Source of the DNA: Macrostomum hystrix
Taxonomy: Eukaryota > Animalia > Platyhelminthes
DNA: 64,000 nucleotides
NCBI GenBank assembly: GCA_950097015.1
Contig: CATNEN010000025.1
Span: 1,860,001 to 1,924,000, forward strand
Direction of reading: 5' to 3'
Part shown: positions 31,053 to 50,930 of the stretch, piece by piece
Layout of the letters: the number at the start of each line of letters is the position of its first letter
Position numbering within the stretch: the first letter of the stretch is position 1
The notes under the pieces: generated by a model
What the model was told of the DNA's origin: nothing
Databases searched by the model: none
The model's input: only the letters and a program-made list of their open reading frames with translations
Made by a program: the position numbers and the translations under genes

Positions 31053-31565
31053 CCTAACCAACGGTTCTACTTGAATCGTGCTAATTATGAATTGTAGCTC
31101 GTATTATGATCGTGCTAATGTAAAAAAACAATTGAACTCGACTTAAAATCTACTTTAACAACAAAAAGCATGGCAGCGTCCATAGATACTCTTGTTTGAG
31201 ATTGGCTAGTAAACTGGCATTGGCTTCTCTGACAGTTATTCAGTGAATTCAATCGACTGATGAGGAGACAGCTTCCATCCTGATTGGCAGACCATATACT
31301 TATTTAGACATGTAAGAATCCACTGCAAAGCTATCTGACATCAGCCTCCCACCTTAGGCGATAGCGAATCAAATTCCATTCATCAGAGCCAGGAAGACAG
31401 TTTATTGTTTGGTTCGCAGCGCGTTTACACAAACAAGACTACATAAGCCGTGACAACATTTATCACATCTTGAGAAGTCTGGCCTGCACAAATCGCGATA
31501 TTCTAAAACGCAATTTATTGTCAAAATTAAAAATGAGTCGTATTCAAAAACGGATTACGCATTAC

Positions 31566-32360
31566 ATGTTCCTGCTGCTTCCCAATTTTCTACTCGGTTA
31601 TCATGGTGCCTTTACACAGAGACGTTTCTCCGCTGACTCCAACTGCAGAGTCTCATTCCACCCGGTGACCGCTCTGAGCTGTGTGAGAAGCGACTTCGTG
31701 CGAACTCACTCTCAGGCTGCGTCTCTGTTGGAGTGCTCGCTGCTGTGTGCAAAGACTGCTCACTGCCAGGCTCTCAGCATGTCCGATGGTCCGTGCAAGC
31801 TGTTCGTGTTCCACAGGTGCAGCAAGAACGTGAGAGACTGCAGCTGCACTCGCACAGCTCAGGTGTTTGTGAGACAGCAGTCGGGACTGCCACCCGGAGC
31901 TCTGTGTCCTGCTGGCTACGCTGACGACCTGTGCGGCACCAAGTACAAGTTCATGAGCTGTGCGAAAAACTGGACAAAGTGCAAGGAAATGTGCGATGCG
32001 GAGTCAGGACTCGTCATCATGGCTGACGTGATGGACAGCACCGAGCTGGTCAGAGTGGGACAGCTGGTTGACAGCAAGTTGTCAAGCATGTCTGGCTCCG
32101 GCTTTGCTTCGATTTACGTTGGCGGTCGGCAGCTTCCGGGCAGTCAGGAGCCATCGGGAGGCTGGCAGTGGGCCAGCTGCGGTCTGAACATCTCTGCCAG
32201 CCTGTGGGGCAGCGATGAGCCCAACAACGGTGGAAGTGCAACAGCTGGAGTTGAAGACGCAGCAGCTGTTGACAAAAGCAATAAATTACTTGACGTACCC
32301 GTTAAAAACTACAATTTGGCAGGTGGAGGCTACTGCGAGTGCGTGTCACCGTTTGATTGA
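31566..32360 (+). CDS. Secreted PAN/apple-like + C-type lectin domain protein, copy A (intact, intronless)
   Basis: Hydrophobic leader MFLLLPNFLLGYHGA (an alternative ATG at 31533 is in frame); PAN-like SCVRSDF..ECSLLCAKTAHCQAL...CKLF; CTLD CPAGY..C..KYKF..W..CKEMC..L..IYVGG..WQW..W..EPNN..ED..YCEC. Confidence 0.82.
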   Translation: MFLLLPNFLLGYHGAFTQRRFSADSNCRVSFHPVTALSCVRSDFVRTHSQAASLLECSLLCAKTAHCQALSMSDGPCKLFVFHRCSKNVRDCSCTRTAQVFVRQQSGLPPGALCPAGYADDLCGTKYKFMSCAKNWTKCKEMCDAESGLVIMADVMDSTELVRVGQLVDSKLSSMSGSGFASIYVGGRQLPGSQEPSGGWQWASCGLNISASLWGSDEPNNGGSATAGVEDAAAVDKSNKLLDVPVKNYNLAGGGYCECVSPFD

Positions 32361-33645
32361 CGTTGTCATTTCTGCATTTGTGCATGCAGGTCCAATCTTA
32401 AGACTGCTGGAGTGTTAGCAGTTGAATAAATAAATACACACTCTGTTGCCCCTATGCCCACTTATTAGCTTCTTTTACTTTCCAACATACCTTTTAAAAA
32501 AACTCGCTTTGAGATGCACTCAGGCACAGTTGCTGCATATTTTTTGTTGCTTCTCGAATCTTGTCAGTTTTCCTGCTACATTCATGCTGTATGTTCTTCA
32601 CTGCAATAATTTACTGAACATACCTGTTATTAGGTTGCCTTAAATTAAAAATGCTGGTTTAGTAGCTCGTAGTTTTCACAGAACTTGTATTAAAAATGTA
32701 ACAGTTTTTCAAATAAAGCTTCTTATCAACTGCTGGCGATAATTTTATCAAAACTAATTGCTTTTTCACTCGTAGAATCTTTTGGAAAACCAAGATTTTC
32801 AAATGCAGTCTTTGTTCTCAGCTGTAGACGTCTTTTATTTTAAATTTAAATAAACGAAATATTCTTAGCAACAGTCAAGTGACACCCCTGTCGCGAGGCG
32901 AAAACTTCTATGTCACTTGAGTCAGTCATCTCACCTGCTGCTTATCGGAGAGTATAGAACTGCTTGAAATTCAGCTTTTTTTGTAAATTGTCATGGGCGA
33001 CTCAAGTCATGGAAATTTTCACCCATTTTTGCTCGGTGCACACACTATAGGTAGTAGTCTACCTATAATTACGAGTGTGTTTTTCATTTCATATTTATTT
33101 GGTGTGATTCAACCCTTCATGGAAAATGAATCACTGCACGTGCGTTGAGTGTACATAAACCATAGTTTGGCCTTTCAAATTCAAGAGCAATTGCCTCTAA
33201 GAAAGAGACAATTGCGTCAAAATTGTATCGTTTAAACGACTCTAGTGTTGAACGAGTGCATAGAATGTACTTTTCGTAGAATCACATTTTTCATTTTGTT
33301 CACCAGCTGCACACAAAATATTGAGTAGAGGGCTCTGCAAAACAGACCTGCGATATCAGTGAATCCATCAGCCTGAAGCTCGCAATTAAAGACTCGGACC
33401 TGCAAAGTGCTGTCAACGTGCCATTCACCTGGAGTACCATCGTGTCTTTCAATAGCTGTAAGCTAGCCTGGTTACAAGCTATCTAAGGTAGTTTCTATTC
33501 TGAATTACCTATGTAGACTAAATGACAGGTAAAAATTCCGTTTTTTATATGAAACTGAAAACGGAGTGGACAGTTGAAAAAAAATATGGACGCCGCGGCT
33601 GTCTGCCTGCTGTCAGCTGTCAAGCATTAATAATAAAAAAGCCAC

Positions 33646-34670
33646 GGGGTTATTTCAAACACTCATATTTTTCTGTATCTAACAACATTTTCAATCGATC
33701 GCCATAAAAATCCTTGATAAAATATTTCGCTCTGTGCAATGAAACAACTTCCGGAATCACGAAACATCGGCATCGTCGATACATTCAAGGATATATACTC
33801 AGCAACAGCTAAAACCCCCCAACTCACGCTGTCACACGGCCCAAAAGTTTTGTATGCCATCGGTGACTCAGAAATGTGTTACACTTCACGCCTGGGTTGG
33901 CATCGCACTGAATGGCAAAACAGAGCTTGTAATGTAACTGGGCAGACCTATGCAGAGCTGCTACAGCAGCAGTTTCTGCCATTTGCTACGAGAACCTTTG
34001 GCAGCCCGCAGAACTGCATGCTTCAAGACGACAACGCTGCGCCACATCGAGCAGCACACGTGCAGCTGCTGAATGAGCAGCTCGGCATTCGCACATTGAA
34101 CTGGCCGTCAAAGTCTCCAGACATGAACCCCATCGAGCATGTCTGGGACTTTGTAAAGCGAAGAGTTCAGCAGGATGCCCCACAGAATGCTGAACAGTTG
34201 CGACTGGCGGTGCTGAATGCCTGGCAGCAGCTGCCCCAAGAGTTCATCAACCGGCTGGTGATCAGGATGCCACGACGAGTCACGGCACTTTGGCATGCTC
34301 GTGGTTCCTACACATGATACTGAGACTAGAATTAAAGACATTGCTTAACTTTTGTGCCCGTGTGACAGCGTGAGTTTTGGGGGGGGGGGTTTAGCTGTTG
34401 CTGAGTATATTCAATTATTCGTAGGGGTGTCTGGTGGCAAAGCGACCAACAGATGTTTTCTGCTCACAAAAATCGCCATAGATGTTGATACAGAGCAATG
34501 CTAGTTGTCCTTGTCATCAGGGTCTCCGACAAGAATCGTTGAATATCTCGACGATGCTGACGTCGGACGGCATTGAAAGTTAGTTCATCGTCAAGGGGGG
34601 AAATGTTAATCCATTTAGGAAAATCAGTCATTCAGTTTGTGAGCTATCATGAAGTTGAGGGGAAAAATGG
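33646..34670 (-). mobile_element. GGGG(T)ATTTCAAA-family MITE split by a Tc1 insertion
   Basis: 33646-33795 and 34408-34670 match, in reverse complement, consecutive parts of 40052-40566. Confidence 0.7.
33796..34407 (+). mobile_element. Internally deleted Tc1-like (DD34E) transposon with TIRs
   Basis: About 65-bp TIRs (tactcagcaacagctaaaacccccc..ctcacgctgtcacacgg and its reverse complement), TA on both sides, and the transposase C-terminus QDDNAAPH...WPSKSPDMNPIEHVW with 34 residues between D and E. Confidence 0.9.
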
Positions 34671-35420
34671 CGTCGAAAAGACTGTGAGTAGCTAGTAGAC
34701 AATATCTGGTTATGATTAGATTCACTCGCCTTTTTTAATTATCTACCTCCTTTTGCAGAAATTAAGTTACAATTTTTAGGACTAGTGACCTGCTGTTATC
34801 AACGTGCTCAGAAAGTATTTCATTGTCGACCCGCAAGGTTCGTTTCATGTATAGTAGACTGCCAGTGAGATAGATACGAGTAGATAGCCGGCCTTGAGTT
34901 CCTGAGAAGAAAATTTACTACCAAAATCTTTTTTTCATATCGCCGCAGGTAGTAAAATAGCAAGTTTTCGAGCGTTAAAATTCTGCAGAGAGCCAACCTG
35001 ATAAGAAATTCTAGTGAGTTCTAGCCTTTAGGGCACTCAAGGTCGATCAGCGCGCCAATGCGTGACAATCAGGCACTGAGCGACTGCTATTGATTAGCCT
35101 CATGCACCTGGCATAGCTTCTGTGACCTAGATAAGGGCTTGGCAATCGCTGCTTTACTCTATCAAACTCCAAGGCGTTTGAGCAGGTGGATGTGATAGAG
35201 TTTCTCCGATTCCGAGTCACGTGCCCTCAGGTTGGTCTCCTTACGAGTGAAAAATGCAGCCAAGGCAGTTCGATAAGACTTGTCACAGACTTGTCCACCC
35301 ACCACCCCCTCCTTCGACTGTCTACTTCTCTGTCCCTGCCTCCGTTTCGCAGGGTTGTTCCGCGCGTCTCACACAGCGCTTCTTCCGCCTCTAGCGCCGC
35401 GGTGCCCGCAGAACAGCCCG

Positions 35421-37591
35421 ATGTCCGACAGCAACAGCGAGAAGGCCCCCATCGTGGGTCCCAGCACCTGCGTCAGCTACACGCAAACCGAAGAGAGCTC
35501 GTTCGTCATCAATGACGCTGGCGCGGGCCCCAGCGGCCGCGGACGCGCCGGCACCGGGCCCTATCTGACCACGGTGCGCGAGGACGAAGAGCTGATGGAG
35601 GTCTCCAGCGAGCAGTTCAGCGGCAGCGGCGCACAAGGAACTAGACATCACAGGACGCCATCGTCAGCTGCTGGGCTGCGGCCGCGCACGCGAACAATGT
35701 CCAACCGGTTCATGTCCAGCGTCCAGAAGATTCGCAGCTGTACTCAGCAGTCGATCCACGAGGTGCCCTGCGAGGATCGCAATAATTCCGCCTTCGCCGC
35801 TGGATTCAATGTCACCAACCTCGTGCAGGGCATCGGTATCATGGGCGTGCCCTACGCGGTGAGTCGCGGCAGCTGGGCTTCTATTGGTGTCATCTGCGTG
35901 GTAGCTGCGCTGTGCTGCTACACCGGTTGTCTGCTAGTGGACTGCCTCTACACCGGGTGTCCACGCACCGGTCGCAGGGTCCGCTACCTGAAATCCTATC
36001 CCGACGTTGGCGCGATGGTGTGGCCTCGATTCGGGCGTCGAGCCGTCACCATCGTCTCCGTAGTAGAGATGTTTGGCGGCATGTGCCTGTACATCATCCT
36101 GCTGGCCAGCACTAGCTCCGCTCTGATGAAAGATCGAGTACCGTCACTCAACATATACCACTGGAGCTGCATCAGCACTTACGCAACCCTACCGCTTACG
36201 TTCATCTCGCGGATGTCGTTCATCTCGTGGTTCAGTATGCTAGCCGTGGTTAGCCTAATGTCAAGCATCGCGTCGGTTATCGTCTTCTGCTTTCTGCACT
36301 TTGATCAGCTCGCGCTGGCCAACATGCCGGGCTTCGATCCCACCAGCTTTCCTGTGAGCTTCGGCATCATCGTGTTCTCCTACTGCGCCCACGCCGTGTT
36401 TCCTGGAATCGAAGAGTGCATGCGGCGGCCGTCTAGCTACCCGGCCATGCTCAGCGTGGCCTTCAGTGTGGCCGCCATTGTCAAGACTGTCATGGGTGTC
36501 ATGGCGGTGCTCATCTTCGGCCTGGGAACTGAGCAGGAGTTTGGGCGCAACCTGGAGATCGACGAGAATTTCAGCTTCATCTCGAATTCGCTCATCTTTG
36601 TCAACGTCTTCTTTAGGTTTGTTGACCTCTCCGAAATTCTATAATAGTAATATTGATGTCCTTGGCAATCAGTTGGGGTCAACTGTCTTGTTGAGTCTGT
36701 CCTCTGCCTCTCATTCTCAATGTGGCCCTAAGGTGTGTAAATTGCGCGACAAGCCCCCAAGCAGCAGTTTCGAGCTCAGGACCTCAGTGCGAGAGACAGA
36801 CGCGAGAGACAAAATAAGGGATGAACGAATAATTTTACAATAGTTGATTACACCTGCCCCAGGTGTAATCGGGCCAGATGTGCAGCCGACAGCACAGCCG
36901 CAGCTATTGCGCAGCGCATCTGAAGGCTGCGTACGGCTGTTCAGTCCATGGACTGGGGGGACGCCACACCCGCCCTCAACTAACCCAGCTAATGCTGGTA
37001 CCGATTTAATAGCTGGGTGAACTGAAACAATGCAGAGTTAAGTATCTTGCTGAAGGACACAAATAGTTCCAGTGGAGTCGGGAATCGAACCCCCGACATT
37101 CAAGTCGTGAGTCCAACGCTCTAACCACAAGGCTACAACCTCCTGCTTATATGAAGCAGGTTTTCAAACGAATAAATGATAATATTTATTGCACCCACCC
37201 ACTTGCCTGACCCAGCATGCCTCTCGTCATCTACGTGGTAGTCGAGCGCTTCGATGCGACTTTTCTTGGCGCCTTCCACCCAGCCTTCCACCGCAATGGC
37301 AGCCTGCACTGGCTGTGGATATTCCTAACCCGGTCCCTGGTGATGACCGCCGGCCTGTTCGTGTCCATGTTGGTGCCGCACTTCGCCCTTCTCATGGGCC
37401 TAGTTGGCTCCTTCACTGGCACATGTCTCTGTTTCGTCTTCCCGGCTTGGTTCCACCTAGTGCTGAAGCGGAAACAGCTCAACGGCTTCGGCGTGTTTGT
37501 GCGCGTCTGCATCATCGTGTTCGGAGCTGCTAGCGGCGCCATCGGCATCTTCTTCTCGGCGACAGAGCTCAAGAGGAAACTGGTGAAGTGA
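35421..37591 (+). CDS. SLC32A1: Vesicular inhibitory amino acid transporter-like (VIAAT/VGAT, SLC32 / Aa_trans family)
   Basis: join(35421..36616,37216..37591), phase 2. AGFNVTNLVQGIGIMGVPYA..CCYTGCLLVDCLY; FPVSFGIIVFSYCAH.VFP.IE..M..PS; VPHFALLMGLVGSFTGT.LCFVFPA.FHL. Confidence 0.85.
36850..37142 (-). mobile_element. SINE family 1, full-length copy in the VIAAT intron
   Basis: Reverse complement of head, central block and 3' block. Confidence 0.88.
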
Positions 37592-38214
37592 GAACTGCTG
37601 CCTCGACTTCTAGTAGATTGTGAACTAGTTCTTATCGGACAAATTCAGGTGTAAAAATTGGACCTATCTAGATTCGCTGGAAGGGCAGTCAGAAGTTCAT
37701 TGAATAAAAGACACTTCTAAATATCTTCCAGAAAATATTATTCAACATTAAATGACTCCAATTTTAACCATGCAATTCATTATTATTGAAGTCTTGCTTT
37801 GTCAGACTTTTTAGCATTCACTAGTACAGCGTATTGCTAACTAAATATACTCAGAATATCCTTGTGTGACTCTTATCAAAATTGTCCGAAACTGAAAAAT
37901 ATCATTTAAACGGCATTTTCAACTAATAATACAAGTTTTCTACATTATACGGTAATAAAAAATACTTAAAAGCGATACGCTAAATAATTAAATAGATAGA
38001 CGAATAAAGGAATGACACATTTTTTTATATGTGCGTATATAAACCTACCAAGGGCTGTACACTGCTGTTCAGTCCATGGACAGGGGAGGACGCCACACCC
38101 AGCCTAAATAGTGTTGAACCATTCAAGAATCAGAAGTAGTCAAATGCTTGAACAGTAGAATGACAACGGCCGGTGTTTCAAATGCACACATTTTTATTTC
38201 TTCTGTTCAGTGCC

Positions 38215-38641
38215 CCCAGTATGAAAACCCGGGCTAGACTTTTCCACTCTATCCGATGAAACAACTTCCAGATCACAAAACATCGGCATCGTCAAGATAT
38301 TCAACAGTTCTTGTACGGCGTGTCTGGTGGCAAGAACAATGTAGGCATGATTTTTCTGCTTAAACATTTCATCATGTAACCATGTCGGCCATGAATGCTG
38401 ATTGTATTTTATTAGTATGGATTCGCCATACGGTTCATACAGAGCAATGCTGGCTGTCCTTGTCATCAGAGTCTTCGACAAGAATCGCTGAATATCTCGA
38501 CGATGCTGACATCGGCTGGCTTCGAAAATAAGTTCATCGTAAAGGGCGGAAAATTTGATCCAATCGGTGGACTTTCACGGAATTCGGTCATTCGCTTTGG
38601 AGCTATCGTGAAGTGGGCTTTGGGTATTTGAAACAGCCCCC
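38215..38641 (-). mobile_element. GGGG(T)ATTTCAAA-family MITE copy
   Basis: Reverse-complement similarity to 40052-40566. Confidence 0.75.
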
Positions 38642-38887
38642 TATCCCCCAGGGGAGAAAATAGCCTGCTCTTTCTACTGTAAAAGGCTCATTTTCACTGC
38701 CACCAAGCGAGTCCGGAACACACAATTGAACATTGTTTTATTCATTTTTGTTCGAACATCCTCAAAGAAATGTCCACATCTATGAGACATGCTGAATCGT
38801 AGAACAGCTAGCTGTTAACCGATGAACTTAAGCCGCTCTTATGTCCGAGGTTAAGCCGATAAAGCGAAAGAAATGATCTTTGCAGCT

Positions 38888-39652
38888 TCAAGCGAAAGGC
38901 GACAGGCACTCGCACAAGCCTCCCGCTGCCAAAGGGTTGTCAAGAGAAACGTCCATGAACTCGCTGGTGCGTGACACAACGAGTCGATCCTCGGAACCTC
39001 CTGAGTTGTTGGGCTCTCGGCTGCTCCACAGGCTGGCAGAGATGTTCAGACCGCAGCTGGCCCACTGCCAGCCTCCCGATGGCTCCTGACTGCCCGGAAG
39101 CTGCCAGCCATCCACAAAAGCTGAGTTGACGTAGGCTAAGTATGAGATCTGCCTGACAATCAACTCTTTCACATGGTTGAACTCGGTGCTGTCCATCACG
39201 TCAGCCATGATGACGAGTCCTGACTCCGCATCGCACATTTCCTTGCACTTTGTCCAGTTTCCCACACAGCTCATGAACTTGTACTTGGTGCCGCACAGGT
39301 CGTCAGCGTAGCCAGCAGGACACAGAGCTCCGGGCGGCAGTCCCGACTGCTGTCTCACAAACACCTGAGCTGTGCGAGTGCAGCTGCAGTCTCTCACGTT
39401 CTTGCTGCACCTGTGGAACACGAACAGCTTGCACGGACCATCGGACATGCTGAGAGCCTGGCAGTGAGCAGTCTTTGCACACAGCAGTGAGCACTCCAGC
39501 AGAGACGCAGCCTGAGAGTGAGTTCGCACGAAGTCACTTCTCACACAGCTCAGAGCGGTCACCGGGTGGAATGAGACCCTATTGCTGCAGCCACTGCTGC
39601 CATCGAGTCCAGTCGCAGTCAGTGCGAAAAGCAGGAAACTGCAGAGCTTCAT
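38888..39652 (-). CDS. Secreted PAN/apple-like + C-type lectin domain protein, copy B (intact, intronless)
   Basis: 254-aa ORF with leader MKLCSFLLFALTATG. The core is near-identical to copy A; the CTLD C-terminal half is divergent (REPNNSGGSEDRLVV..FMD). Confidence 0.85.
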   Translation of the reverse strand: MKLCSFLLFALTATGLDGSSGCSNRVSFHPVTALSCVRSDFVRTHSQAASLLECSLLCAKTAHCQALSMSDGPCKLFVFHRCSKNVRDCSCTRTAQVFVRQQSGLPPGALCPAGYADDLCGTKYKFMSCVGNWTKCKEMCDAESGLVIMADVMDSTEFNHVKELIVRQISYLAYVNSAFVDGWQLPGSQEPSGGWQWASCGLNISASLWSSREPNNSGGSEDRLVVSRTSEFMDVSLDNPLAAGGLCECLSPFA

Positions 39653-40051
39653 CTTTCTTAGCTACTTCAGGCCTGCGAGATTTGGAAAATAGCAGCAGTG
39701 TTTGTTGGCAGAAGAGCTTCCCTATCGATGCGCGATTTGAAATCTGCTTTTACTAAGCCAATCGATCGCTGTCTGTTAGCTGCCACCAATCGCTTACCAT
39801 GGCATTCAATGTTCATAACGATACCAGTCAACAGTTTTCATCCGGAGAAACGGTTTTATAAGTGTCTCTTGAGTTTCTTATTGCGAATGCCTGTCATCCT
39901 TATTTTTTGTTTGCTCACTACTCCAATTTGTTAAGCGCAACTCGTCATCTTGAGCCATCGCTAAGCAAAGTCTCTATAATCAAGAACTCGTATCAAGCTT
40001 TAGCAGTAGAAAGGCCTGCTATTTTTCCTCCTGGGCTCGACAGACCTGCAC

Positions 40052-40566
40052 GGGGATATTTCAAATACCAATTGCCTACATCACGATAGAATTTCGTGAA
40101 AGTACACAATTTCGATTAACATTTTCCGCCCTTTACGATGACCTAATTTTCGAAGCCGGCCGATGTCAGCATCGTCGAGATATTCAGCGAATTCTTGTTG
40201 AATTCCCTGGTGACAAGGACAACTAAGATTGCTCGGTAATAAACGTATGGCGAATTCATATTGGTTCAAAAATGAAAAAAGTTATAATTAAATCAATCCA
40301 AAATATAAACAATGATAGCCGACATGGTTACATGAGGAAATTTTGGGAGCAGAAAATATATACCTAGGTGGTCGGTGGTTTTTGCCACCAGACACTCCGA
40401 CAATAATCGTTGAATATCTCGACGATGCCGATGTTTCGTGATTCTGGAAGTTGCTTCATCGGACAGAGTGAAAAAATAAATCCCATTTTGTGGAGTTTCA
40501 TGGCGATTGGTTGAATATTTTGGTAGTTAGTGGAAAAAGGAAAAATGTTGCTATTTGAAATACCCC
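40052..40566 (+). mobile_element. About 515-bp unclassified MITE, TIR GGGG(A)TATTTCAAATA, with an internal inverted repeat
   Basis: ggggatatttcaaata ... tatttgaaatacccc; internal arms catcgtcgagatattca / tgaatatctcgacgatg; several further copies in the window. No TSD could be established. Confidence 0.75.
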
Positions 40567-40749
40567 TTACCCACTAGCAACTTACAAGTACATGAGAATA
40601 AGATAAGCCAACTAGTCGGGACGTACATTGGGGTAGAGAGTGAAAGGAGAGAGGGTGGTTCGCCAGCCAATAGCAAGAGAGGGGGAGAGAGACGGTTTAC
40701 CTAATATGAGCAATTCAACTTATTGTCAAGTTAGTGCCCTGGCACCATA

Positions 40750-40860
40750 GGAATTAAGTGTCTTGCTCGAGGACCCAAAATCCTACTCCTGGGCTGCAAT
40801 TCGAACTAGCGACCTCTCGTTCAAAAGTCCAAAGCTCTAACCACTTCATGGACTACAAGC
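40750..40860 (-). mobile_element. Degenerate SINE 5' half (tRNA head + central block)
   Basis: ttaagtgtcttgctcgaggac...ttcgaactagcgacc...ctctaaccact. Confidence 0.6.
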
Positions 40861-41613: not shown

Positions 41614-41880
41614 TGGGGTATTTCAAATACTTCCCGATAGCTGCCAAACCGAATGACCTATTTTCTCTACGAAAGTCCGCCATTGAATCCAAATTTTCCG
41701 CACTTGACGATGAAATAATTTTCGAAGCCAGCATTCGATGTCAGCATTGTCGGAGATGCTGGTGGCAAGGTCAACTAACATTGCTCTATATAAACTCTAT
41801 GACGAATTTATATTGGTTCAAAAGTATAATACAACAAATAAATGATACAATAATTAACAATATTAGCCGTCTAACAATAA
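41614..41880 (+). mobile_element. GGGG(T)ATTTCAAA-family MITE, left part only
   Basis: Starts ggggtatttcaaatac and follows 40052 onward with deletions. Confidence 0.7.
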
Positions 41881-41889
41881 AAGCCACAA

Positions 41890-42750
41890 TGTGCCTGGTT
41901 GATGGCGCCTGCCCGAAATTCTGTCGCGCCCCCCGTCCCAGTCGCCATGGAAGCGGCTGTCAATGCCGAATTGGAAAAATGGCAGACATTAGGAGTCATT
42001 ACGCCTGTCGATGGCCCGGTGAGTAACGCGTCACCGGTTGTATGGGTCAAAAAGAAGGATGGCTCACTAAGAATGTGTGCCGATTACAGCGTTCACGTCA
42101 ACTCTCAAATCAAGTCCGACGCGTACCCGATCCCGAACATTGAGTGTCTCTTTGCTAAGCTAAAAAACGCTAAGACGTTCGCTTCCGTTGATCTCCGCTC
42201 TGCTTATTGGCAGATCGAACTCGATGAGGCCGCGAAGGATCTGTCTACCATCAACACCTCGAAAGGTCTCTTCCGGGTAAACCGACTCCAGATGGGTATG
42301 AAAAACTTGTCATTCATCTTTCAACGCGTGATGGAGAACATCCTCGAGGATGTCAAAGGCGTTTTGGTTTATCAGGACGACGTGCTTGTATTTGCTGAAA
42401 ATTCATCTTCCCTGCAAAAGAGGCTTCGAGCTGTAAAAACGCGGCTTTCTGAGAAAAACGTCACAGTCAATGAGGGCAAATGTATCGAAGAATTTGATGA
42501 GATATCATTCCTAGGCTTTCGGATCTCAGCGGCTGGCATTCGACCAGATGACCGACTGGTGCAAAAGATCATGGGCATCGCAACTCCAGCCAACAAGAAA
42601 GAACTGGAGCAATTTCTCGGCCTCGTAAACTTTTTCGGTCGACTAATCCCAAATTTCGCTAGAAAAACCAGGAGTCTTCACGGTCTTCGACGAGATGACG
42701 CTCCTTTCGCATGGACCACTGAATGCGAGGAGGCTTTTGTGTAGCTCAAA
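41890..42750 (+). mobile_element. Ty3/gypsy reverse transcriptase fragment
   Basis: ASPVVWVKKKDGSLRMCADY..YPIP..VDLRSAYWQI..TINTSKGLF..RL.MG..YQDDVLV..FLGF..FLGLVNFF; no LTR, gag or integrase seen nearby. Confidence 0.92.
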
Positions 42751-43332
42751 AGGTAAATCTCTAGTCTATGGCCAAGGGCGCGAGGGCTATTAAGACTGAG
42801 GCTATGTCAGAATGTTCACAATTAATTAATGTCCATTATCTTTTCTTCACCTCAGGAGTAGTGTCTATGGTTTTATATTTCGGCATTCGATTTGGAAGCT
42901 GATTGAGCATTCTGGTGTATTCTGTGGTAAACCCCTTTACTGTGTTTTGCTCATCCACTCTACCACACACTTCATTCCGAAATTTCTACTAAAGCAATTC
43001 CTATCTGATGTAACTTATTGGGACACAAGTTCTTCTTGGATTCGCTAAACAATTTCACATTGTGAAATTCATTAATTTTCTGTATTTTTAGATTGAGACC
43101 CTGGATCTTAAACGAACGATTTGCGATGCAGCATATGTAAGAAATATTTCAATGATAATCTTGCCCAGCTCAGAGATATGCACTTTATCAACTGAAACAA
43201 CTACGACAAACAGACAGTACGAATGCGATCTAATTTTATTGCGAAAATTACGAAAGCTCTTTCTCCTATCAGAAGGAAATTCTCTCAACCAAACGGTGAC
43301 ACCCACTCGCAGTAGCCTCCAGCTGCGTACTT

Positions 43333-44069
43333 TTAGTTTTTAACGGGTACGTCAAGTAATTTATTGCTTTTGTCAACTGCTGCTGCGTCTTCAACTCCAG
43401 CTGTTGCACTTCTACCGTTGTTGGGCTCTTCGCTGCTCCACAGGCTGGCAGAGATGTTCAGACCGCAGCTGGCCCACTGCCAGCCTCCCGATGGCTCCTG
43501 ACTGCCCGGAAGCTGCTGACCACCAACGTAAATCGAGTAGTAGCCAGACATGCTTGACAACTTGCTGTCAACCACCTGTCCCACTCTGACCAGCTCGGTG
43601 CTGTCCATCACGTCAGCCATGATGACGAGTCCTGACTCCGCATCGCACATTTCCTTGCACTTTGTCCAGTTTCCCACACAGCTCATGAACTTGTACTTGG
43701 TGCCGCACAGGTCGTCAGCGTAGCCAGCAGGACACAGAGCTCCGGGTGGCAGTCCCGACTGCTGTCTCACAAACACCTGAGCTGTGCGAGTGCAGCTGCA
43801 GTCTCTCACGTTCTTGCTGCACCTGTGGAACACGAACAGCTTGCACGGACCATCGGACATGCTGAGAGCCTGGCAGTGAGCAGTCTTTGCACACAGCAGC
43901 GAGCACTCCAGTAGAGACGCAGCCTGAGAGTGAGTTCGCACGAAGTGGCTTCTCACGCAGCTCAGATCGGTCCCCGGATGGAATGAGAGCTATTGCTGCA
44001 GTCAACTCTGGTTGCTTCGAGAAGCTCGAAGACTGTCAGAAGCCAAACTAGAAAATGCAGAACCTGCAT
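43333..44069 (-). pseudogene. PAN + C-type lectin copy C: 1-nt deletion after the signal peptide and truncated 3' end
   Basis: ATG 44069 gives leader MQVLHFLVWLLTVFELLEA. TGCAGCAATAGC-TCTCATTC has lost one base versus copies B and D, giving an early stop. Similarity ends at PVKN* (43333), without the terminal YCEC. Confidence 0.8.
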
Positions 44070-45399
44070 TATGAGTCGAGGGCTGTACAATGTTCCAAAT
44101 ATATTTTCTGAGACGCTGAGATTGCATGTGAATTTCGCTGTGTTTTCTTCAACTCTAGGAAAATTGAGTAGGAGGAGGCCGATGCTGTATTATACCTTTT
44201 TGTACCGTTCTGCCTTTTAATGTTTTATCTGAAAAACTCTGGCGATATAACCCATGGCATTTAATGCATTCTTCCTCGCTGGCAACTGAGCTGTTTCCTT
44301 TTAGCTCGACTTGCCAATGCTAGGGCCCGCTTAACTTGCCGCTGCCTGATCGTTGGCAGCCAATAAACCATGATTGTTGTCTTGGTAACAGTGAGTGGGG
44401 CGCTGAGCTGTCTTCATCCTAAAGCAACCTAATGCTTGCACGGGCAGGAATGATTGTCAAGGCACTCAACACATCGAACTCATCGAATCGTGCATCTTGT
44501 CGGAAAAAAACTCTAAAATCGCCGAAAGGAGCTCATGACCTCTCTCTAGTTGTATTGGAAATCTATCGAATCGCGAGAGAAGTGAAACGAATTTGGCACG
44601 GTTCGTCGAGGATCTAAGCCAAGATTTTTCAGTATCAACAATCGTCACAGTCCAATCTTAGAATCAGCAGCGTGGGTGTTTGAGTAGACAAATAAGTCAG
44701 AAATCTTGCAGAACTCATGCCAATCAAAAGCTTTTAACCAGCCTAATTTTGACTGCCATCGAAGAGCATTAAACGCTTTTCGTGGATTCTAAAGCAACTG
44801 CTTTTTTAAATAGCAAAATGGGTTGAACGCCTTAGCTGCTGCAGTGTCAGGCAGACGGGCAGACAGTATTAGCATCCGGTATCGCTAACATGCGGTCCTA
44901 CTCCAGAGAGAGCAGAGCGCGAGTGTCGGTTCTTTCTGAGCTCATCCAGAAAGCCAGCTATTTAGCAGTTTTTATAAAAAGGCTTGGGGTTGACAACCAT
45001 CGTGGCTTCCAAGATCTAAGTATATAACAATGTGTTGTTAAAAAAAAAAAATAATATATAAAAAAAAAAATCAGCACCCATAGATGGCGTGCGCGTTTTA
45101 ATAATAATAATAATAATAATAATATAACCGAGTAGTATTGCAGAGCAGGCCAGGGAACCTCTTGTTTTGAACAGTTCCGTGGAGGAAGGCCGGGGGTAAA
45201 TTGTCAGATGCTGGCAAATAGAAAGACGAGATTGAATTTGCAGCCACTCAGAGTCAGTCTTTTTAGCCTAGGAGCAGTGCAGTCCATGACTTAAGAAAGC
45301 GGTTAACATTTTTGGAACAACATTTTATAGTTTAAATATACGCCATCTTACTCATACTCATATCATACATTATACAAAACACACAAGGGGTTTGGTCAG

Positions 45400-46697
45400 A
45401 ACGCGCGGTTTGACGGTGTGACTCCCGGTTTTAAGGTCAGGGGTTCGATTACCAACTCCACTGAAATACGGGGGGTGTCCCAGAAATAGCGGGAAAATCG
45501 ATGCACAGGCAAACTGGTGAAACATAGTTTATTGAAACTCACGTCACTGATAAATAAACATTCAGCAGTTCTAACGCTTTTTTAATCAAGTAAAAATGTC
45601 AATTCATTAAAAAGTTATGGCTAAAATAAGAACAAGGGGTAAGGGGTAGAGTTTCACCAAGTCAAGACCCCAACCTAAGTTTGTCCTTAAAACAAAATTT
45701 TTGCGACAAAAGAAAATGAGCAGAAGCATCAGTGAACAGAAGCAGAAAAAGGCAACAGACGAGCAGAGAAGCGTGAGCACCAGAATCAAAATAAGCCCAA
45801 GCTGACGCAAGAAATACCCGTGGCACCAACGACAGCAAGCACGAGACTTCGCGAATATCGACATTTTGTGCGCCTCGACAAGACGCCGCTGTTGAGTTTG
45901 GATTTTTTCATTTTCCCTTGTTCAATCCTTCAATGCTTAGCGCTTCGTCCAAAGAAGGTCAGCTCCAGTTCGTGTACTCCCAATGGAAATCGGGCAAGCG
46001 AGGCAGTGAAATTGTAAGCCAGCTGACTGAAATCCACGGAGTGAGTGCCATCTCGAAGAGTGCCTGTCTATCGCTGGCTTGAAGAGTTCAGTCATGGGCG
46101 AACAGACGTTGCCGATGACACAGCCAACCGTGGCCGTCCGATCTCTCCATCAACAAAGGCACAGATTCAAAGGGTGAATGCAGATGCCATCAATGCGCTT
46201 CTCACGCGATGGACTATGTGCTGCGAGCTAAGGGGGGGACTTCGTCGAAAAGTCGTCAGTCGCCGGCGATGGCGATGCTGCGTGACCGATTCCGCTGGCC
46301 TTGACTTGGTGTAACTCTACCCCTTACCCCTTGCTCTAATTTTAGCCATAACTTTTTAATGAATTGACATTTTTACTTGATTAAAAAAGCGTTAGAACTG
46401 CTGAATGTTTATTTATCAGTGACGTGAGTTTAAATAAACTATGTTTCACCAGTTTGCCTGTACATCGATTTTCCCCGCTATTTCTGAGACCCCGCTAACC
46501 CTACGTAATTCGTGTCCCTTAGAATGATTTTAACTCTGTATTGATTCAGTTCACCCAGTTAAATGGGTACCAGCATCAGCTGGTGTAATTGAAGGTGGGT
46601 GTGGCGTCCCCCAGTCCATGGACTGAACAGCCGTACGCAGCCTTCAGATGCACCGCGCAATAGCTGCGGCTGTGCTGTCGGCTGCACATCTGGCCCT
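45400..46697 (+). mobile_element. SINE family 1 copy split by the mariner insertion
   Basis: Head at about 45400-45466 (ggttcgattaccaactccactg); central and 3' blocks resume at 46508-46697. Confidence 0.75.
45469..46505 (+). mobile_element. Internally deleted mariner-like transposon with about 190-bp TIRs
   Basis: Long inverted repeats (about 45480-45667 and 46303-46492), TA on both sides, a frameshifted HTH remnant (..EIHGVSAISKS / VYRWLEEFSHGRTDVADD..RGRP) joined to a C-terminal remnant (AINALLTRWTMCCELRG). Confidence 0.85.
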
Positions 46698-46939
46698 AAG
46701 GTTTCGCGTTTCATAAAATGGAGGGCAAATAGAATTATTAAAGAGTAGCCAAAGCTAGTTTTACTCAGAGTAGTAACGACTGTATTTTGTCAATAATACT
46801 CTCACGAAAAATGAACTGTTATATCTTTTTGGTAAAATCTGCAAATTGAATGAACCAAAGAGTTATTTTTAGTGATAAATGCGATCAAGAGCCGACAATA
46901 GGTTATAATTTTCCTGTGATTTGTATATTCCAATTAAAG

Positions 46940-47045
46940 ACAGCTGGGTGAGCTGAATAAATGCAGAAATAAGTCTCTTCGAGTCCGGAATCGAACCCCC
47001 TACCTCCAGGCCGTGAATCCGACGCTCTAATCACTAGGCTACAAA
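46940..47045 (-). mobile_element. SINE family 1, 3'-truncated copy
   Basis: Reverse complement reads ttgtagcctagtgattagagcgtcgga...ggttcgattccggactc...cagctcacccagctgt. Confidence 0.75.
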
Positions 47046-47909
47046 CGCTACTTGACTACAACAATGTGGCAGCAACGCCAAACCTCACCATCCGCCCTCC
47101 AATCAGCTGAACGCTTAATATGCGCTACTAAAGTACATGTGAAACAGCACCCAGCAACGCATCCGATCTGATGTTCTATCATGATAGCTTCCATTGTGAT
47201 ATGGGGATAGAATTCTGATAGCAAACGATTATCAAACTCCCTGCGTGCATTGTATAGATTCTACATGTGAGATACTTGCGTGTTTTGTTCTACTCATTTT
47301 GGACTCTCAAATAAAAAGCGTTGGCAGCCGTTATTGTAAAATAGACATCAACAGGCAAAATTTCCGCGGAAGATTGTAAAACTTTTTTTGGCGCTTGTCA
47401 AAATTAATGCTGGTTATAAAAATTAACTCCGAAGTGGCATTGAAAAACGGAAACATTGTAAGTTTTTAGCCAGGGTCCGGGTCTGCCTTTGGTAGATTAG
47501 TGCTTAGCAATACCCGGAGCGTAAATGACATGGCAAATACGCTCGTACGATGATTACGCTAGTATATGAAGTTAATGGTGAAGAATAATTAATAAAATTA
47601 AAATCGAATTGTGAATACACGGTTCATGTTTTCCAATGTAAGCTATTGTTCCAGAAAATGCGAAGCATAAAATCGCGTGTCCGACAGCATATTTAATATG
47701 GCAGGCTGATTGCAGCCTAGCTCAATTCCTGTCTGTCCGATTGGGAAGGCCTACAGATGGCAGTCGATTGGCTGCCGGCTTAAGTATAAAAAGCTTATCC
47801 CAAATCGAAATCATAAATAGACCGAGGAGCCAAGTACGATCGTATTTAAAGTAGCTAGCATTTGAAATCCAGTCATCAATTACGTCTCATCCGTTCCTGG
47901 TTTAGAAAG

Positions 47910-48869
47910 ATGAAGCTTTGCAGTTTCCTGCTTTTCGCACTGACTGCGACTCGACTCGAGGGCAGCAGCGGCTGCAGCAATAGGGTCTCATTACACCCGG
48001 TGACCGCTCTGAGCTGTGTGAGAAGTGACTTCGTGCAAACTCACTCTGAGGCTGCGTCTCTGCTGGAGTGCTCGCTGCTGTGTGCAAAGACTGCTCACTG
48101 CCAGGCTCTCAGCATGTCCGATGGTCCGTGCAAGCTGTTCGTGTTCCACAGGTGCAGCAAGAACGTGAGAGACTGCAGCTGCACTCGCACAGCTCAGGTG
48201 TTTGTGAGACAGCAGTCGGGACTGCCGCCCGGAGCTCTGTGTCCTGCTGGCTACGCTGACGACCTGTGCGGCACCAAGTACAAGTTCATGAGCTGTGCGA
48301 AAAACTGGACAAAGTGCAAGGAAATGTGCGATGCGGAGTCAGGACTCGTCATCATGGCTGACGTGATGGACAGCACCGAGCTGGTCAGAGTGGGACAGCT
48401 GGTTGACAGCAAGTTATCAAGCATGTCTGGCTACTACTCAATTTACGTTGGCGGTCAGCAGCTTCCGGGCAGTCAGGAGCCATCGGGAGGCTGGCAGTGG
48501 GCCAGCTGCGGTCTGAAGCTCACCCAGCTGTCTTTAATTGGAATATACAAATCACAGGAAAATTATAACCTATTGTCGGCTCTTGATCGCATTTATCACT
48601 AAAAATAACTCTTTGGTTCATTCAATTTGCAGATTTTACCAAAAAGATATAACAGTTCATTTTTCGTGAGAGTATTATTGACAAAATACAGTCGTTACTA
48701 CTCTGCCAGCCTGTGGGGCAGCCGAGAGCCCAACAATGGTGGAAGTGCAACAGCTGGAGTTGAAGACGCAGCAGGAGTTGCCAGATTAAACCAGTTCATT
48801 GACTTACCCATTGAAAACTACAATTTGGCAGGTGGAGGCTACTGCGAGTGCGTGTCACCGTTTGATTGA
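47910..48869 (+). pseudogene. PAN + C-type lectin copy D, interrupted by a 189-bp insertion (48517-48705)
   Basis: Leader MKLCSFLLFALTATR. The lectin sequence stops at WQWASCGL, the insert introduces a stop at 48602, and the lectin resumes at SASLWGSREPNN..YCECVSPFD*. Confidence 0.85.
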
Positions 48870-49021
48870 CGTCGTCATTTCTGCAGCCTGGGATGCAGCA
48901 TTATTCTCAAAACAGCCTAAGATTGTCTAAATAAAAACTTGTTTTCGCTGAGACCAACAACGGTGGCAGTGGCGGGGAAAGAAGTGTAATTTTCCTAATT
49001 TTTCTTTAAACGCTTGTGACC

Positions 49022-49175
49022 TGGATGCCATGTGCGATGGTCTATGCACCGCCTGTGCCCACCATGTGCGATGGTCCAAGCACCGCCTGTGCCCACCATG
49101 TGCGATGGTCCATGTACCGCCTGTGCTGCCCACCATGTGCGATGGTCCATGCACCGCCTGTGCCCACCATGTGCC
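49022..49175. repeat. About 34-bp tandem repeat (ccatgtgcgatggtccatgcaccgcctgtgccca) x~4.5
   Basis: Directly visible. Confidence 0.9.
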
Positions 49176-49278
49176 AGCTCTCTGATAAATGTACTAGTTT
49201 CGGACCTTTGCTATTCTTTGTTTTTGCTCTCTGGATAGAACTGGCCGCTGCAATGTTCTGCTTAACAGTAGAACTACC

Positions 49279-49770
49279 TAGGGGGGAATCCCCCCTGACA
49301 ATTTTTTTGCAGCACCCGAACGGAACAATGCAAGCAGGTGAAACTCAAGAACACGGGCCAAATTTTTGTTGCGCATCTTCTGAAACAAGAAACAAGTCAT
49401 ATATTCAATGTTTTTGGCCGAAGGTCCGACTTTTCCCATAAGAGCTAGTGTATTTCATACACCCCTATACACGAATTTGCACTGCGCCTCAGTGCGGCCT
49501 TGCCAGGCCTTCAAAATTGATCAGCATGTCACCCGACTGTGCCTGCATCATCTCCGTCTTCGGTGGTCACCTACCTTTATCTAGACAGACTGCTGGACCT
49601 TCAAGGGCTACAACAGGTGGAACTAAGCTACTATGGACACCCTGACGCGAATTTCTCAAATTTCAATGCTCAAGCCAAAATATTAGGCGCAGCTCAACCA
49701 CAGGACACCATCGCCTAGTCTGTCAACCAATCAGTCACCACCCAACGCTGTTAGCATTCGGGCGCTGCCA
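49279..49770 (+). mobile_element. CCAAGGGGGG-family MITE copy
   Basis: Collinear similarity to 19584-20046. Confidence 0.78.
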
Positions 49771-50294
49771 ATCAACCCACATTTTCCTACATGCAAGCTG
49801 CTCCAAAGACCCCTCTTAAGTATCTGGTCGGCTGACCTAAACTTGCTATTTTATCTTTTTTTATATTTTCCAATTTACACTTTCCGCATGGCAACCAGCA
49901 TCGATTTAGGCAAGGACTAAAAGTGCTGGTTGATATCTCCCAGGAGAAATATTTTTGCAGCTGCCTATTTTATTACTTCAATGTAACGACTGCGAAAAAT
50001 ATTACAAGCTATAACATAAGCGTAACTAGATACAATAAGAGCTCCTAGGCATTGTTGTGCGCCTATCTTTCTCTCTCCCAGAGTTGCGATTGGCTGGTCA
50101 TGACTGGGAAGAAAAAATAATCTGATAATCTATAAATAATAATAAGAATAAAATAATAATAAAATACATTACATTCAAATGTATTGTATAATTTTTAATT
50201 GTTTTAACTAGACAATCCGACAACAATGGATGCCGCATCTGATTCAATAAAAAATGCTTATATTCTATATAGGCGCAGCAATTGACTACAGTTA

Positions 50295-50375
50295 AATATT
50301 TATTGACTTACCTATTGAAAACTAAAATTTTGCAGCTGGAGGCTATTGCGAGTGCGTGTCACCGTTTGATTGACG
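50295..50375 (+). pseudogene. Lectin relic E: isolated 3' end
   Basis: attgacttacctattgaaaacta...ggaggctattgcgagtgcgtgtcaccgtttgattgacgt matches the last ~80 nt of copy D. Confidence 0.8.
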
Positions 50376-50844
50376 TTTGACCCGTCCAACCACACTTGTA
50401 AGCTGCACTCAAGCATGGCTCAGTGAGCAGAGCTCACAATTCTGCTACTTCTTTAGACAAAGCCAGCGAGCATCTTAGTGAGGCCGACAGAGAGTTTTCC
50501 TGTGCAGCTTTTGATGGCAGAAGCAATCGATTTGCATAGAGAAAATTGCCAATACGTGTCACCCATTGAATGAGGCCCAGGCTTTGTATGCGTAAAATTT
50601 CCTTATTTTTTAAGCTGACTCGTAAAATCCTGCCTTTAAGAAAGATGAAAAAACCTGAGTATATGCTTTTTTGTAAAGCTTTTAGAATTGTTTCTCTCCA
50701 TTCATCCGGATACTTCATGGCTCTAGGCTGGCACAATGCAGAAGGTTAGAAGTAGACGCATTCCGTTTAACCTCTCTGGAATTCAATGCTTTGCAACTTT
50801 TTTATCTTATTGTAAGAGAATATTGTCATTTTACTATAACAGTC

Positions 50845-50930
50845 AGCTTAGAATAACGAAGATAACGAGTCCTGATCGCACATTTCCTTGTACCAAGTCG
50901 CTTCTCACGCAGTTCAGAGCGTTCACAGCT
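50845..50930 (-). pseudogene. Lectin relic F: internally deleted fragment
   Basis: Reverse complement reads gctctgaactgcgtgagaagcgactt (PAN start) joined to caaggaaatgtgcgat-caggactcgttatc (CTLD helix 1 region). Confidence 0.55.

What the first reader, a model, noticed from the sequence alone, without database searches (positions are those of the whole stretch)
31566..50930. Cluster of PAN + C-type lectin genes with a homogenised core and a recombinant, hypervariable ligand-binding region
Six copies or relics lie in about 19 kb in both orientations. About 380 nt (PAN domain to CTLD helix 2) are near-identical across A-D, whereas the second half of the CTLD varies in blocks. The variants do not fit one tree: AKN/VGN and WGS/WSS split {A,D}|{B,C}, but the codon just before EPN, 6 nt from the WGS/WSS site, splits {A,C} (GAT/GAA) | {B,D} (CGA). 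SGYYSIYVGGQQ is shared by C and D, DKSNKLLDVPVKN by A and C, and FIDLPIEN by D and relic E. The variable blocks fall on the EPN loop and the beta3-beta4/WND-equivalent region, which form the sugar site in CTLDs. This looks like segmental gene conversion among intact genes and pseudogene donors generating a recognition repertoire, analogous in principle to other invertebrate diversified lectin systems, and may be an undescribed innate-immune or mucus-recognition family.
Basis: partly seen in the sequence, partly recalled or inferred. Interest (0 to 1): 0.8.

Follow-up and report, generated by a model that had tools for sequence, protein, structure and literature searches.

The report
Flatworm lectin genes shuffled by recombination
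This flatworm genome holds at least 150 small secreted lectin-like genes whose variable parts are swapped between copies at two conserved stretches; the cluster in this window is a mostly decayed example, and nothing shows that the swapping is a purpose-built immune diversity system.

Summary
Six copies or relics lie at 31.5-50.9 kb in both orientations. About 396 nt are nearly identical in A-D, and the rest differs in blocks that do not fit one tree.

The domain call holds at family level. A family profile and a confident model (pLDDT 93) give a C-type lectin fold, with codakine as best match (Z 18.2). Weak but repeated matches support PAN/apple. Single genes get no Pfam hit.

The cluster is not special. 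The genome, whose size and contig count equal the published Macrostomum hystrix assembly, has at least 150 intronless copies. Uncharacterised relatives exist in M. lignano.

- **Core:** synonymous divergence is 0-0.06 in the core and 0.9-1.2 between types in the C-terminal block. The core is therefore homogenised by gene conversion, and the variable blocks are old lineages, not hypermutated.
- **Chimeras:** across the family, the N-terminal and C-terminal blocks have almost unrelated genealogies. 28 of 100 genes are one-breakpoint chimeras.
- **Selection:** pN/pS stays below 1 everywhere, and is 0.42 at the EPN loop.
- **This cluster:** only B is clearly intact and A possibly. C, D, E and F are dead.

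The "pseudogene-donor repertoire" reading is not supported. The scan noted the same family before, in another cluster (s1-258398).

The parts
31533..32360 (+). Copy A. The reading frame is open through the PAN and lectin domains. Upstream of 31650 it is unrelated to the family's signal peptide, so it may be intact with a weak replacement leader (MFLLLPNFLLGY...).
31650..32045 (+). The near-identical stretch as seen in A: the PAN domain through to the start of lectin helix alpha-2. The same stretch is B 39575-39182, C 43985-43594 and D 47985-48380 (approximate).
   Evidence: core dS 0-0.06
38888..39652 (-). Copy B. The only clearly intact gene: 254 aa with signal peptide, PAN domain and C-type lectin-like domain (EPN at residues 213-215).
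43288..44010 (-). Copy C, a pseudogene. It has no signal-peptide region, a 1-nt deletion near its 5' end, and an in-frame TAA at 43333-43335 that removes the last ~20 residues.
   Evidence: (3 stops)
47910..48869 (+). Copy D, a chimera. It is B-like in the 5' leader and signal peptide, and A/C-like from the core onward. A 183-nt insertion with stop codons breaks it.
48518..48700 (+). The insertion inside D. It has no GT-AG ends. It is 100% identical to 46771-46953 on the other strand, and these are the only two copies in the genome.
46771..46953 (-). Twin, and probable template, of the insertion in D. It is not a lectin relic.
50302..50377 (+). Relic E, the last ~75 nt of a gene copy, 93% identical to D. 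It shares IDLPIEN with D. It shares the TAC-to-TAA stop and the CAGCTGG variant with C.
50875..50926 (-). Relic F. A 32-nt piece of the PAN N-terminal part (about 90% identical) is joined to a 16-nt piece of the lectin alpha-1 region. The core between them is deleted.
35280..37591 (+). An unrelated amino-acid transporter gene (Aa_trans, two ORF pieces) lying between A and B. It shows that the cluster is interrupted by other genes.

Best explanation
These are germline members of a large multigene family restricted to Macrostomum, as far as searched. [quoted passage not shown]

Each gene has three variable modules: the PAN N-terminal half, the helix alpha-2 region (V1), and the EPN-to-beta-5 loops (V2). 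Two conserved blocks separate them. The first is the core, residues about 69-152, which covers the PAN C-terminal half, the linker and the start of the lectin domain. The second is the LPGSxEPxGGWxW block.

Purifying selection keeps the two blocks alike at protein level. Because they are alike, they are where non-allelic homologous recombination can start. Gene conversion then homogenises them further. Conversion tracts or unequal crossovers that end within or next to them join variable modules of different ancestry into chimeric genes.

The window shows one cluster late in a birth-and-death cycle: one intact gene (B), one possibly intact (A), two recent pseudogenes (C, D) and two relics (E, F), all still exchanging sequence.

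Shown here: the domain folds, the family size, the homogenised core, the old variable lineages and the chimeras. Inferred: secretion, ligand binding and any biological role. An extracellular recognition role, immune or otherwise, is the most likely.
For: Fold and domains:
- Family profile against solved structures: codakine E = 7e-8. PAN-type matches: Eimeria MIC5 3e-4 and HGF N-domain 3e-3.
- AF2 model: pLDDT 93.3, pTM 0.85.
- Structure search: codakine Z 18.2, rmsd 2.1 over 127 residues.
- Pfam hits among 81 family members: Lectin_C in 5, PAN_4 in 4, PAN_1 in 4.

Family size: at least 150 matches, about 140 without stops, on many contigs.

Conversion:
- Core dS is 0-0.06 for all 15 pairs of A, B, C, D, P and Q. 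V2 dS is 0.9-1.2 between types.
- Q shares the core and V1 with the window copies, but differs at 70-73 of 127-128 nt in the PAN N-terminal part.
- In 24 independent close pairs, pS is 0.03-0.08 in the core, against 0.29-0.51 at the 5' end and 0.20-0.34 at the 3' end.
- Between clusters, core pS is 0.21-0.29 among C25, C1 and C7, against 0.57-0.59 to relatives from other sequencing runs.

Chimeras:
- D is B-like over 35 consecutive informative sites, then A-like.
- L024 = L027 (N part) + L014 (C part): 235 of 242 sites fit one breakpoint at aa 103-112.
- 28 of 100 genes are significant one-breakpoint chimeras.
- Distances in the N segment and in V2 are almost uncorrelated (Spearman 0.12).
Against: - There are no expression, protein or ligand data, so function is inferred from folds only.
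- A-D lack the Asn of the WND-type calcium and sugar site (they have MD, LD or ID). Only about 20 of 100 family members have N-D there, so classical calcium-dependent sugar binding is uncertain.
- Parents in the chimera scan were chosen by the end segments, which inflates its p-values.
- Single-SNP incompatibilities inside otherwise identical blocks, such as WGS/WSS lying 6 nt from the pre-EPN codon, could come from read mis-mapping during polishing of a long-read assembly.
- Conversion cannot be told from unequal crossing-over with one genome.
Confidence: 0.8

Rival explanations
1. An adaptive combinatorial repertoire. Selection for diverse recognition (immune, mucus, microbiota or mating-related) maintains many module combinations, and the conserved blocks serve as shuffling points.
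For: - The family is large and mostly intact.
- Three variable modules recombine almost freely.
- The sugar-specificity motif varies: EPN 58, EPD 13, QPD 8, QPS 6 of 100.
- V1 between types has dN/dS 1.1-1.7, though over only 28 codons.
Against: - No 12-codon window has pN/pS above 1 in 24 independent pairs, and the EPN loop is 0.42.
- Shuffling at conserved blocks is what neutral homologous recombination produces anyway.
- The window cluster itself is mostly dead.
- There are no expression or population data.
Confidence: 0.2
2. Assembly or polishing artefact. The identical core and the mosaics arise because reads from paralogues were mixed, or because haplotypes were not collapsed.
For: - The matching published assembly was built from PacBio reads with canu. 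Haplotigs were purged and it went through several polishing rounds.
- Short identical blocks next to variable ones are where short reads mis-map.
- The 183-nt insertion in D is 100% identical to its twin 1.6 kb away.
Against: - The copies lie on one contig in different orientations, with unrelated flanks and other genes and transposon relics between them.
- Variable blocks differ at dS about 1, which is far beyond allelic divergence.
- The sequenced line has an inbreeding coefficient of about 0.998.
- The same core pattern recurs in clusters on many contigs, with long clean chimeras of hundreds of nt.
- Polishing can only blur sequences that are already nearly identical.
Confidence: 0.05
3. 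Somatic or programmed diversification. Pseudogene-templated conversion into an expressed gene occurs within an individual, as in chicken immunoglobulin genes.
For: Pseudogenes and relics that share short patches with intact copies lie next to B and A.
Against: - Nothing in a single germline assembly can show somatic change.
- There is no single acceptor gene, since more than 100 intact paralogues exist.
- The shared patches are fixed in the germline.
Confidence: 0.02
4. The core is kept identical by a constraint on the nucleotide sequence itself, such as an RNA element or small-RNA target, and not by conversion.
For: Core pS is also somewhat lower than flank pS in comparisons with relatives from other runs: 0.57-0.59 against 0.65-0.82.
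Against: - Core pS is 0.21-0.29 among some clusters but 0.46-0.58 among others in the same genome. That fits exchange among subsets, not a universal constraint.
- Identity tracts have different ends in different pairs. For example, Q shares the core plus V1.
Confidence: 0.05

Closest known systems
Soluble invertebrate C-type lectins (codakine of the clam Codakia; CEL-I of a sea cucumber; mosquito mosGCTL-1)
   Same: - The lectin fold matches: Z 17.6-18.2 and rmsd 2.1-2.6.
- The N-terminal hairpin cysteines of the long form are present.
- An EPN-type motif is followed six residues later by Glu in B.
   Different: - An N-terminal PAN/apple domain is fused rigidly to the lectin domain (pTM 0.85).
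- The canonical beta-3/loop cysteine pair seems to be replaced by C200-C249.
- The Asn of WND is absent in A-D and in about 80% of the family.
- Sequences are too divergent for a Pfam hit on single window genes.
Macrostomum lignano uncharacterised proteins A0A1I8HTM9, A0A1I8H311 and A0A267EP21 (PAA63283.1)
   Same: - Same two-domain layout and length.
- Full-length matches at E = 1e-38 to 1e-88.
- Same conserved core and the same CECxSPF end.
   Different: - At most 47-48% identical to B.
- A0A267EP21 has one intron of about 600 nt at residue 150, at the end of the core. All copies sampled in this genome are intronless.
Sea urchin Sp185/333 (SpTransformer) genes
   Same: Both are clustered, largely intronless coding regions built as mosaics of shared sequence blocks. 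In both, recombination and gene conversion among neighbours are thought to create diversity (PMC1988830 and PMC5103432, found).
   Different: - No homology, and the proteins are not lectins.
- Sp185/333 is shown to respond to immune challenge. Nothing is known here.
- The blocks here are three modules around two conserved hinges, not element patterns with gaps.
Region-limited concerted evolution in multigene families (general model of interlocus gene conversion plus birth-and-death)
   Same: - Low dS inside tracts and high dS outside them.
- Segment trees conflict.
- Pseudogenes take part.
   Different: Nothing essential differs. The scale is notable: at least 150 genes and 28% detectable chimeras.
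Chicken immunoglobulin pseudogene-templated gene conversion
   Same: Pseudogenes that share short patches with functional copies lie nearby.
   Different: That system is somatic and directional and acts on one rearranged acceptor gene. Here there are many intact germline genes, the exchanges are fixed in the germline, and no direction is known.

Membership tests
[quoted passage not shown] | CTLD double-loop alpha/beta fold | tested here: met
   Model residues 108-254 have pLDDT above 94. Codakine matches at Z 18.2, rmsd 2.1 over 127 of 129 residues, and 66 chains reach Z >= 8, the listed ones nearly all CTLDs. Foldseek gives TM 0.80.
[quoted passage not shown] | Sequence match to the family model (Pfam Lectin_C) | tested here: inconclusive
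   A-D individually get no hit at E <= 0.1. Five of 81 family members hit Lectin_C, best 1.3e-9. The family profile hits solved CTLDs at 7e-8.
[quoted passage not shown] | Conserved disulfide cysteines (C1-C4, C2-C3, and C0-C0' in long-form domains) | tested here: inconclusive
   C111 and C120 (the hairpin pair) are invariant. C140 and C247 are present in 75-76% of genes. C200 and C249 are invariant but lie in non-canonical positions. Pairing was not read from the model.
Calcium-dependent carbohydrate-binding C-type lectins | Complete site-2 ligand set: EPN or QPD, Glu about six residues later, and N-D of WND | tested here: not met
   B has EPN and E221 but FMD in place of WND. A, C and D have a 4-residue insertion after EPN and have LD or ID. 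Across the family, EPN occurs in 58 of 100 genes and N-D in about 20. Some members may qualify; the window copies do not in full.
PAN/apple domain | Sequence match to PAN models or to solved PAN domains | tested here: met
   The matches are weak but repeated. Eimeria MIC5 apple domain 3.1e-4 and HGF N-domain 3e-3. PAN_4 and PAN_1 each hit 4 of 81 members. UniProt names one M. lignano relative 'Apple domain-containing'.
PAN/apple domain | PAN fold (beta sheet packed on one helix, disulfide core) | not tested
   Model residues 28-100 have pLDDT 97-98 with strands, one helix, then strands.
Interlocus gene conversion / concerted evolution | Synonymous divergence much lower inside the tract than in flanking coding sequence of the same genes | tested here: met
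   Core dS is 0-0.06 against V2 dS 0.9-1.2. Across the family, pS is 0.03-0.08 in the core against 0.2-0.5 at the ends.
Interlocus gene conversion / concerted evolution | Conflicting genealogies along the gene | tested here: met
Pseudogene-templated diversifying conversion (chicken Ig type) | One expressed acceptor gene, with one-way transfer from pseudogene donors | tested here: not met
   More than 100 intact paralogues exist. Direction cannot be read from one genome. Somatic change is not testable with these tools.

The most novel reading that the evidence does not exclude
The family is a germline combinatorial recognition repertoire. Two conserved hinge blocks are kept partly because they let three variable surface modules (PAN N-terminal half, helix alpha-2 region, sugar-site loops) be reshuffled among more than 150 genes. 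Selection for diverse ligand recognition in immunity, microbiota handling or mating keeps the combinations. That would make it a flatworm counterpart of Sp185/333 or of parasite var-type families.
Probability: 0.2. Interest if true: 0.7.

Novelty: new member of a known kind. Interest (0 to 1): 0.45.

Why it matters
Macrostomum species are laboratory models with RNA interference and, in M. lignano, transgenesis. Almost nothing is known about how free-living flatworms recognise microbes or self.

A family of at least 150 secreted PAN-lectin genes, with a high-confidence structure and a clear modular recombination pattern, is a concrete candidate set for such recognition. It is also a clean natural example of how conserved blocks steer homologous recombination in a multigene family.

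The evolutionary mechanism itself (gene conversion plus birth-and-death) is textbook, and no function is shown. The value is a documented new family and a testable hypothesis, not a new principle.

Tried and rejected
- **Pfam on A-D alone:** no hit. The domain call had to come from family profiles and structure.
- **Word-index protein search with B:** no hit. This was a false negative, because the exhaustive profile search found M. lignano relatives.
- **Intron in D:** I considered that the 183-nt interruption is an intron. Rejected, because it has no GT-AG ends and has an identical twin 1.6 kb upstream.
- **Seventh lectin relic at 46767-47003:** rejected for the same reason. Only the inserted stretch matches.
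- **Transposon carriage:** I considered that the genes ride on a transposon, since they are intronless and dispersed. Rejected, because flanks are not shared between copies, apart from about 100 nt of 5' leader in B, D and P.
- **Hypermutation of the variable blocks:** rejected. Synonymous change is as high as non-synonymous, and whole blocks are shared in discordant combinations.
- **First structure model (16 sequences):** it left the PAN part at pLDDT about 50. Only the 81-sequence alignment resolved it.
- **Literature searches:** no paper on this family was found.


Full report
**What is in the window**

The region holds four long copies of one intronless gene and two short relics.
- A, 31533-32360 (+): the reading frame is open. 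Upstream of 31650 it has no similarity to the family's signal peptide.
- B, 39652-38888 (-): a complete 254-aa gene with a signal peptide.
- C, about 44010-43288 (-): no leader, a 1-nt deletion near the 5' end, and an in-frame TAA at 43333-43335.
- D, 47910-48869 (+): cut by 183 nt at 48518-48700 that carry stop codons and have no GT-AG ends.
- E, 50302-50377 (+): the last ~75 nt of a copy.
- F, 50926-50875 (-): 32 nt of the PAN start joined to 16 nt of the lectin alpha-1 region.

An amino-acid transporter gene, a DDE transposase relic and a reverse-transcriptase fragment lie between the copies.

A further tblastn hit at 46767-47003 is not a lectin relic. It is the 100% identical twin, on the other strand, of the insertion in D. 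These are the only two copies of that stretch in the genome.

**Checking the observation**

In a nucleotide alignment, A-D are nearly identical over about 396 nt (A 31650-32045). They differ at 4-11 of 128 positions in the first part and 1-4 of 270 in the second. Beyond that they differ in blocks.
- V1 (79 nt) splits {A,C,D}|{B}, with 38-39 differences between types and 4-6 within.
- V2 (122-137 nt) pairs A with C (9 differences). D is 16 from A, and B is 44-51 from all three.
- The 5' leader pairs B with D (12/89).

Seventy-eight informative sites give 15 different splits, and 862 of 3003 site pairs fail the four-gamete test. Incompatibility is lower between neighbouring sites than in permutations (p = 0.002).

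D is B-like over 35 consecutive informative sites and then A-like. It has small B-like patches at the codon before EPN and inside V2.

**Domain identity**

Single window proteins get no Pfam hit, even at E = 0.1. Family-level evidence is clear.
- A profile of 81 family members hits solved C-type lectin domains, with codakine at 7e-8. Its N-terminal part hits two PAN-type structures: Eimeria MIC5 at 3e-4 and the HGF N-domain at 3e-3.
- Among those members, 5 hit Lectin_C and 4 each hit PAN_4 and PAN_1 on their own.
- With that alignment AlphaFold2 gives pLDDT 93.3 and pTM 0.85, with the PAN part at 97-98. This suggests one rigid two-domain unit.
- Residues 108-254 superpose on codakine at Z 18.2, rmsd 2.1 Å over 127 residues.

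The PAN fold itself was not searched separately.

The canonical calcium and sugar site is incomplete in the window copies. B has EPN and the Glu six residues later, but FMD where WND is expected. A, C and D also carry a four-residue insertion after EPN.

**Genome and family**

The window is C25:1860001-1924000 of a 220,453,370-base, 42-contig genome. These figures equal the published Macrostomum hystrix assembly of the SR1 inbred line, described as about 220 Mb in 42 contigs with inbreeding coefficient about 0.998 (PMC10468722). Earlier scan notes also call the genome Macrostomum.

A six-frame search with B finds 150 matches, the ceiling of what was scored. Ten of them contain stops. They lie in clusters on many contigs.

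The word-index search of public proteins was blank. The exhaustive profile search found full-length relatives (E = 1e-38 to 1e-136). The named ones are all uncharacterised M. lignano entries, labelled automatically as C-type lectin or Apple domain proteins. One of them has an intron at residue 150, the end of the core.

No paper describing the family was found.

**Why the core is identical**

I added the two closest genes elsewhere on the contig. P lies 830 kb away and Q lies 500 kb away.
- Core dS is 0-0.06 for all 15 pairs. V2 dS is 0.9-1.2 between the types {A,C,D}, {B,P} and {Q}.
- Q shares the core and V1 with the window copies, yet differs at 70-73 of 127-128 nt just upstream.

So the variable blocks are old lineages and the core has been homogenised. 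This is gene conversion, not hypermutation of the variable parts.

The pattern is family-wide.
- In 24 phylogenetically independent close pairs drawn from 100 intact genes, pS is 0.03-0.08 across residues 69-152. It is 0.29-0.51 at the 5' end and 0.20-0.34 at the 3' end.
- Even between clusters on contigs C25, C1 and C7, core pS is only 0.21-0.29. It is 0.46-0.58 for other clusters and 0.57-0.59 against relatives from other sequencing runs.

This uneven pattern fits exchange among subsets of genes better than a universal nucleotide constraint.

**Shuffling**

Distances in the N segment and in V2 are almost uncorrelated across the 100 genes (Spearman 0.12). Of 26 genes with close neighbours in both segments, 17 have discordant ones.

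Several genes are clean one-breakpoint chimeras.
- L024 equals L027 in the N part and L014 in the C part. 235 of 242 informative sites fit a breakpoint at aa 103-112.
- L048, L050, L047 and L054 behave likewise, with breakpoints at aa 93-130, 155, 202 and 183-186.

In a scan of all 100 genes, 28 show a significant single breakpoint. The parents were chosen by the end segments, so those p-values are optimistic.

In the clean examples the breakpoints lie in or beside the two conserved blocks. Across the 28-gene scan the midpoints are spread from aa 45 to 210.

The family therefore consists of three variable modules joined by two recombination-prone conserved blocks.

**Is it a diversity generator?**

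- In the six close genes, V2 dN/dS between types is 0.25-0.45. V1 is 1.1-1.7, but over only 28 codons in helix alpha-2.
- In the 24 independent pairs, no 12-codon window exceeds 1. The EPN loop is 0.42, residues 225-248 are 0.62-0.80, and the maximum of 0.93 is at residues 165-176.
- Variation is not confined to the sugar site. The PAN N-terminal half is equally variable.
- The specificity motif does vary across the family: EPN 58, EPD 13, QPD 8, QPS 6 of 100. Functional diversification therefore remains possible.

This cluster has one or two live genes among six copies, while the family at large is mostly intact. Nothing indicates one-way transfer from pseudogenes or any somatic process.

**Artefact check**

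The copies sit in different orientations on one contig, with unrelated flanks and intervening genes. Their variable blocks differ far beyond allelic levels, and the sequenced line was highly inbred. Uncollapsed haplotypes are therefore excluded.

Polishing with mis-mapped reads could still scramble isolated SNPs inside identical blocks. I therefore trust the block-level mosaics more than incompatibilities a few bases apart.

**Verdict**

The mechanism, gene conversion and recombination at conserved blocks within a birth-and-death family, is well supported and ordinary in kind. The adaptive-repertoire and pseudogene-donor reading is not supported, though its germline form is not excluded.

An earlier follow-up in this scan (s1-258398) reached a similar reading on another cluster of the same family. 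I tested its claim independently, and I add the module shuffling, the structure and the family census.

The broken copies C and D were searched only as their separate open pieces.

Noticed in passing
window 48518-48700 (+) and 46771-46953 (-): The 183-nt stretch that breaks copy D is a 100% identical inverted copy of sequence 1.6 kb upstream, and the genome holds only these two copies. The right junction shares a few bases (ACnnCTCTG) with the lectin sequence. It looks like a templated insertion made during break repair or template switching, or else a local assembly error.
   Followed up: partly
window 51146-52381: An array of about 77 copies of a 16-nt unit (TGTCTCATCTCTCCTG). It has strong strand skew and gives long spurious ORFs in three frames.
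   Followed up: partly
window 49028-49174: A short tandem repeat with a 34/71-nt unit, about 4 copies, just downstream of copy D.
   Followed up: no
window 35280-36644 and 37217-37591 (+): An amino-acid transporter gene (Pfam Aa_trans) in two ORF pieces, presumably separated by an intron. It sits between lectin copies A and B.
   Followed up: partly
window 33739-34317 (+) and 41899-42744 (+): A DDE_3 transposase relic and a reverse-transcriptase fragment lie between the lectin copies.
   Followed up: partly
L043:10001-11386 (M. lignano NIVC01001858.1): The M. lignano relative PAA63283.1 has one intron of about 600 nt at residue 150, exactly at the end of the conserved core. All sampled copies in this genome are intronless. 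The expanded family may descend from an intron-less derivative of a two-exon gene.
   Followed up: partly
protein P0001 (UniRef A0A1I8H3Z5, 3072 aa): An M. lignano 'Apple domain-containing protein' matches the family profile in four separate stretches. It is probably a gene model that fuses several tandem family members.
   Followed up: no
family-wide (100 genes, loci L001-L125): The sugar-specificity tripeptide varies (EPN 58, EPD 13, QPD 8, QPS 6, others). Only about a fifth of members keep N-D at the WND position. The cysteines C140 and C247 are each present in about three quarters of the genes (76 and 75 of 100); whether they occur in the same genes was not checked.
   Followed up: partly
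The word-index protein search returned nothing for B, although relatives 47% identical exist in the same collection. A blank from that tool was misleading here.
   Followed up: yes
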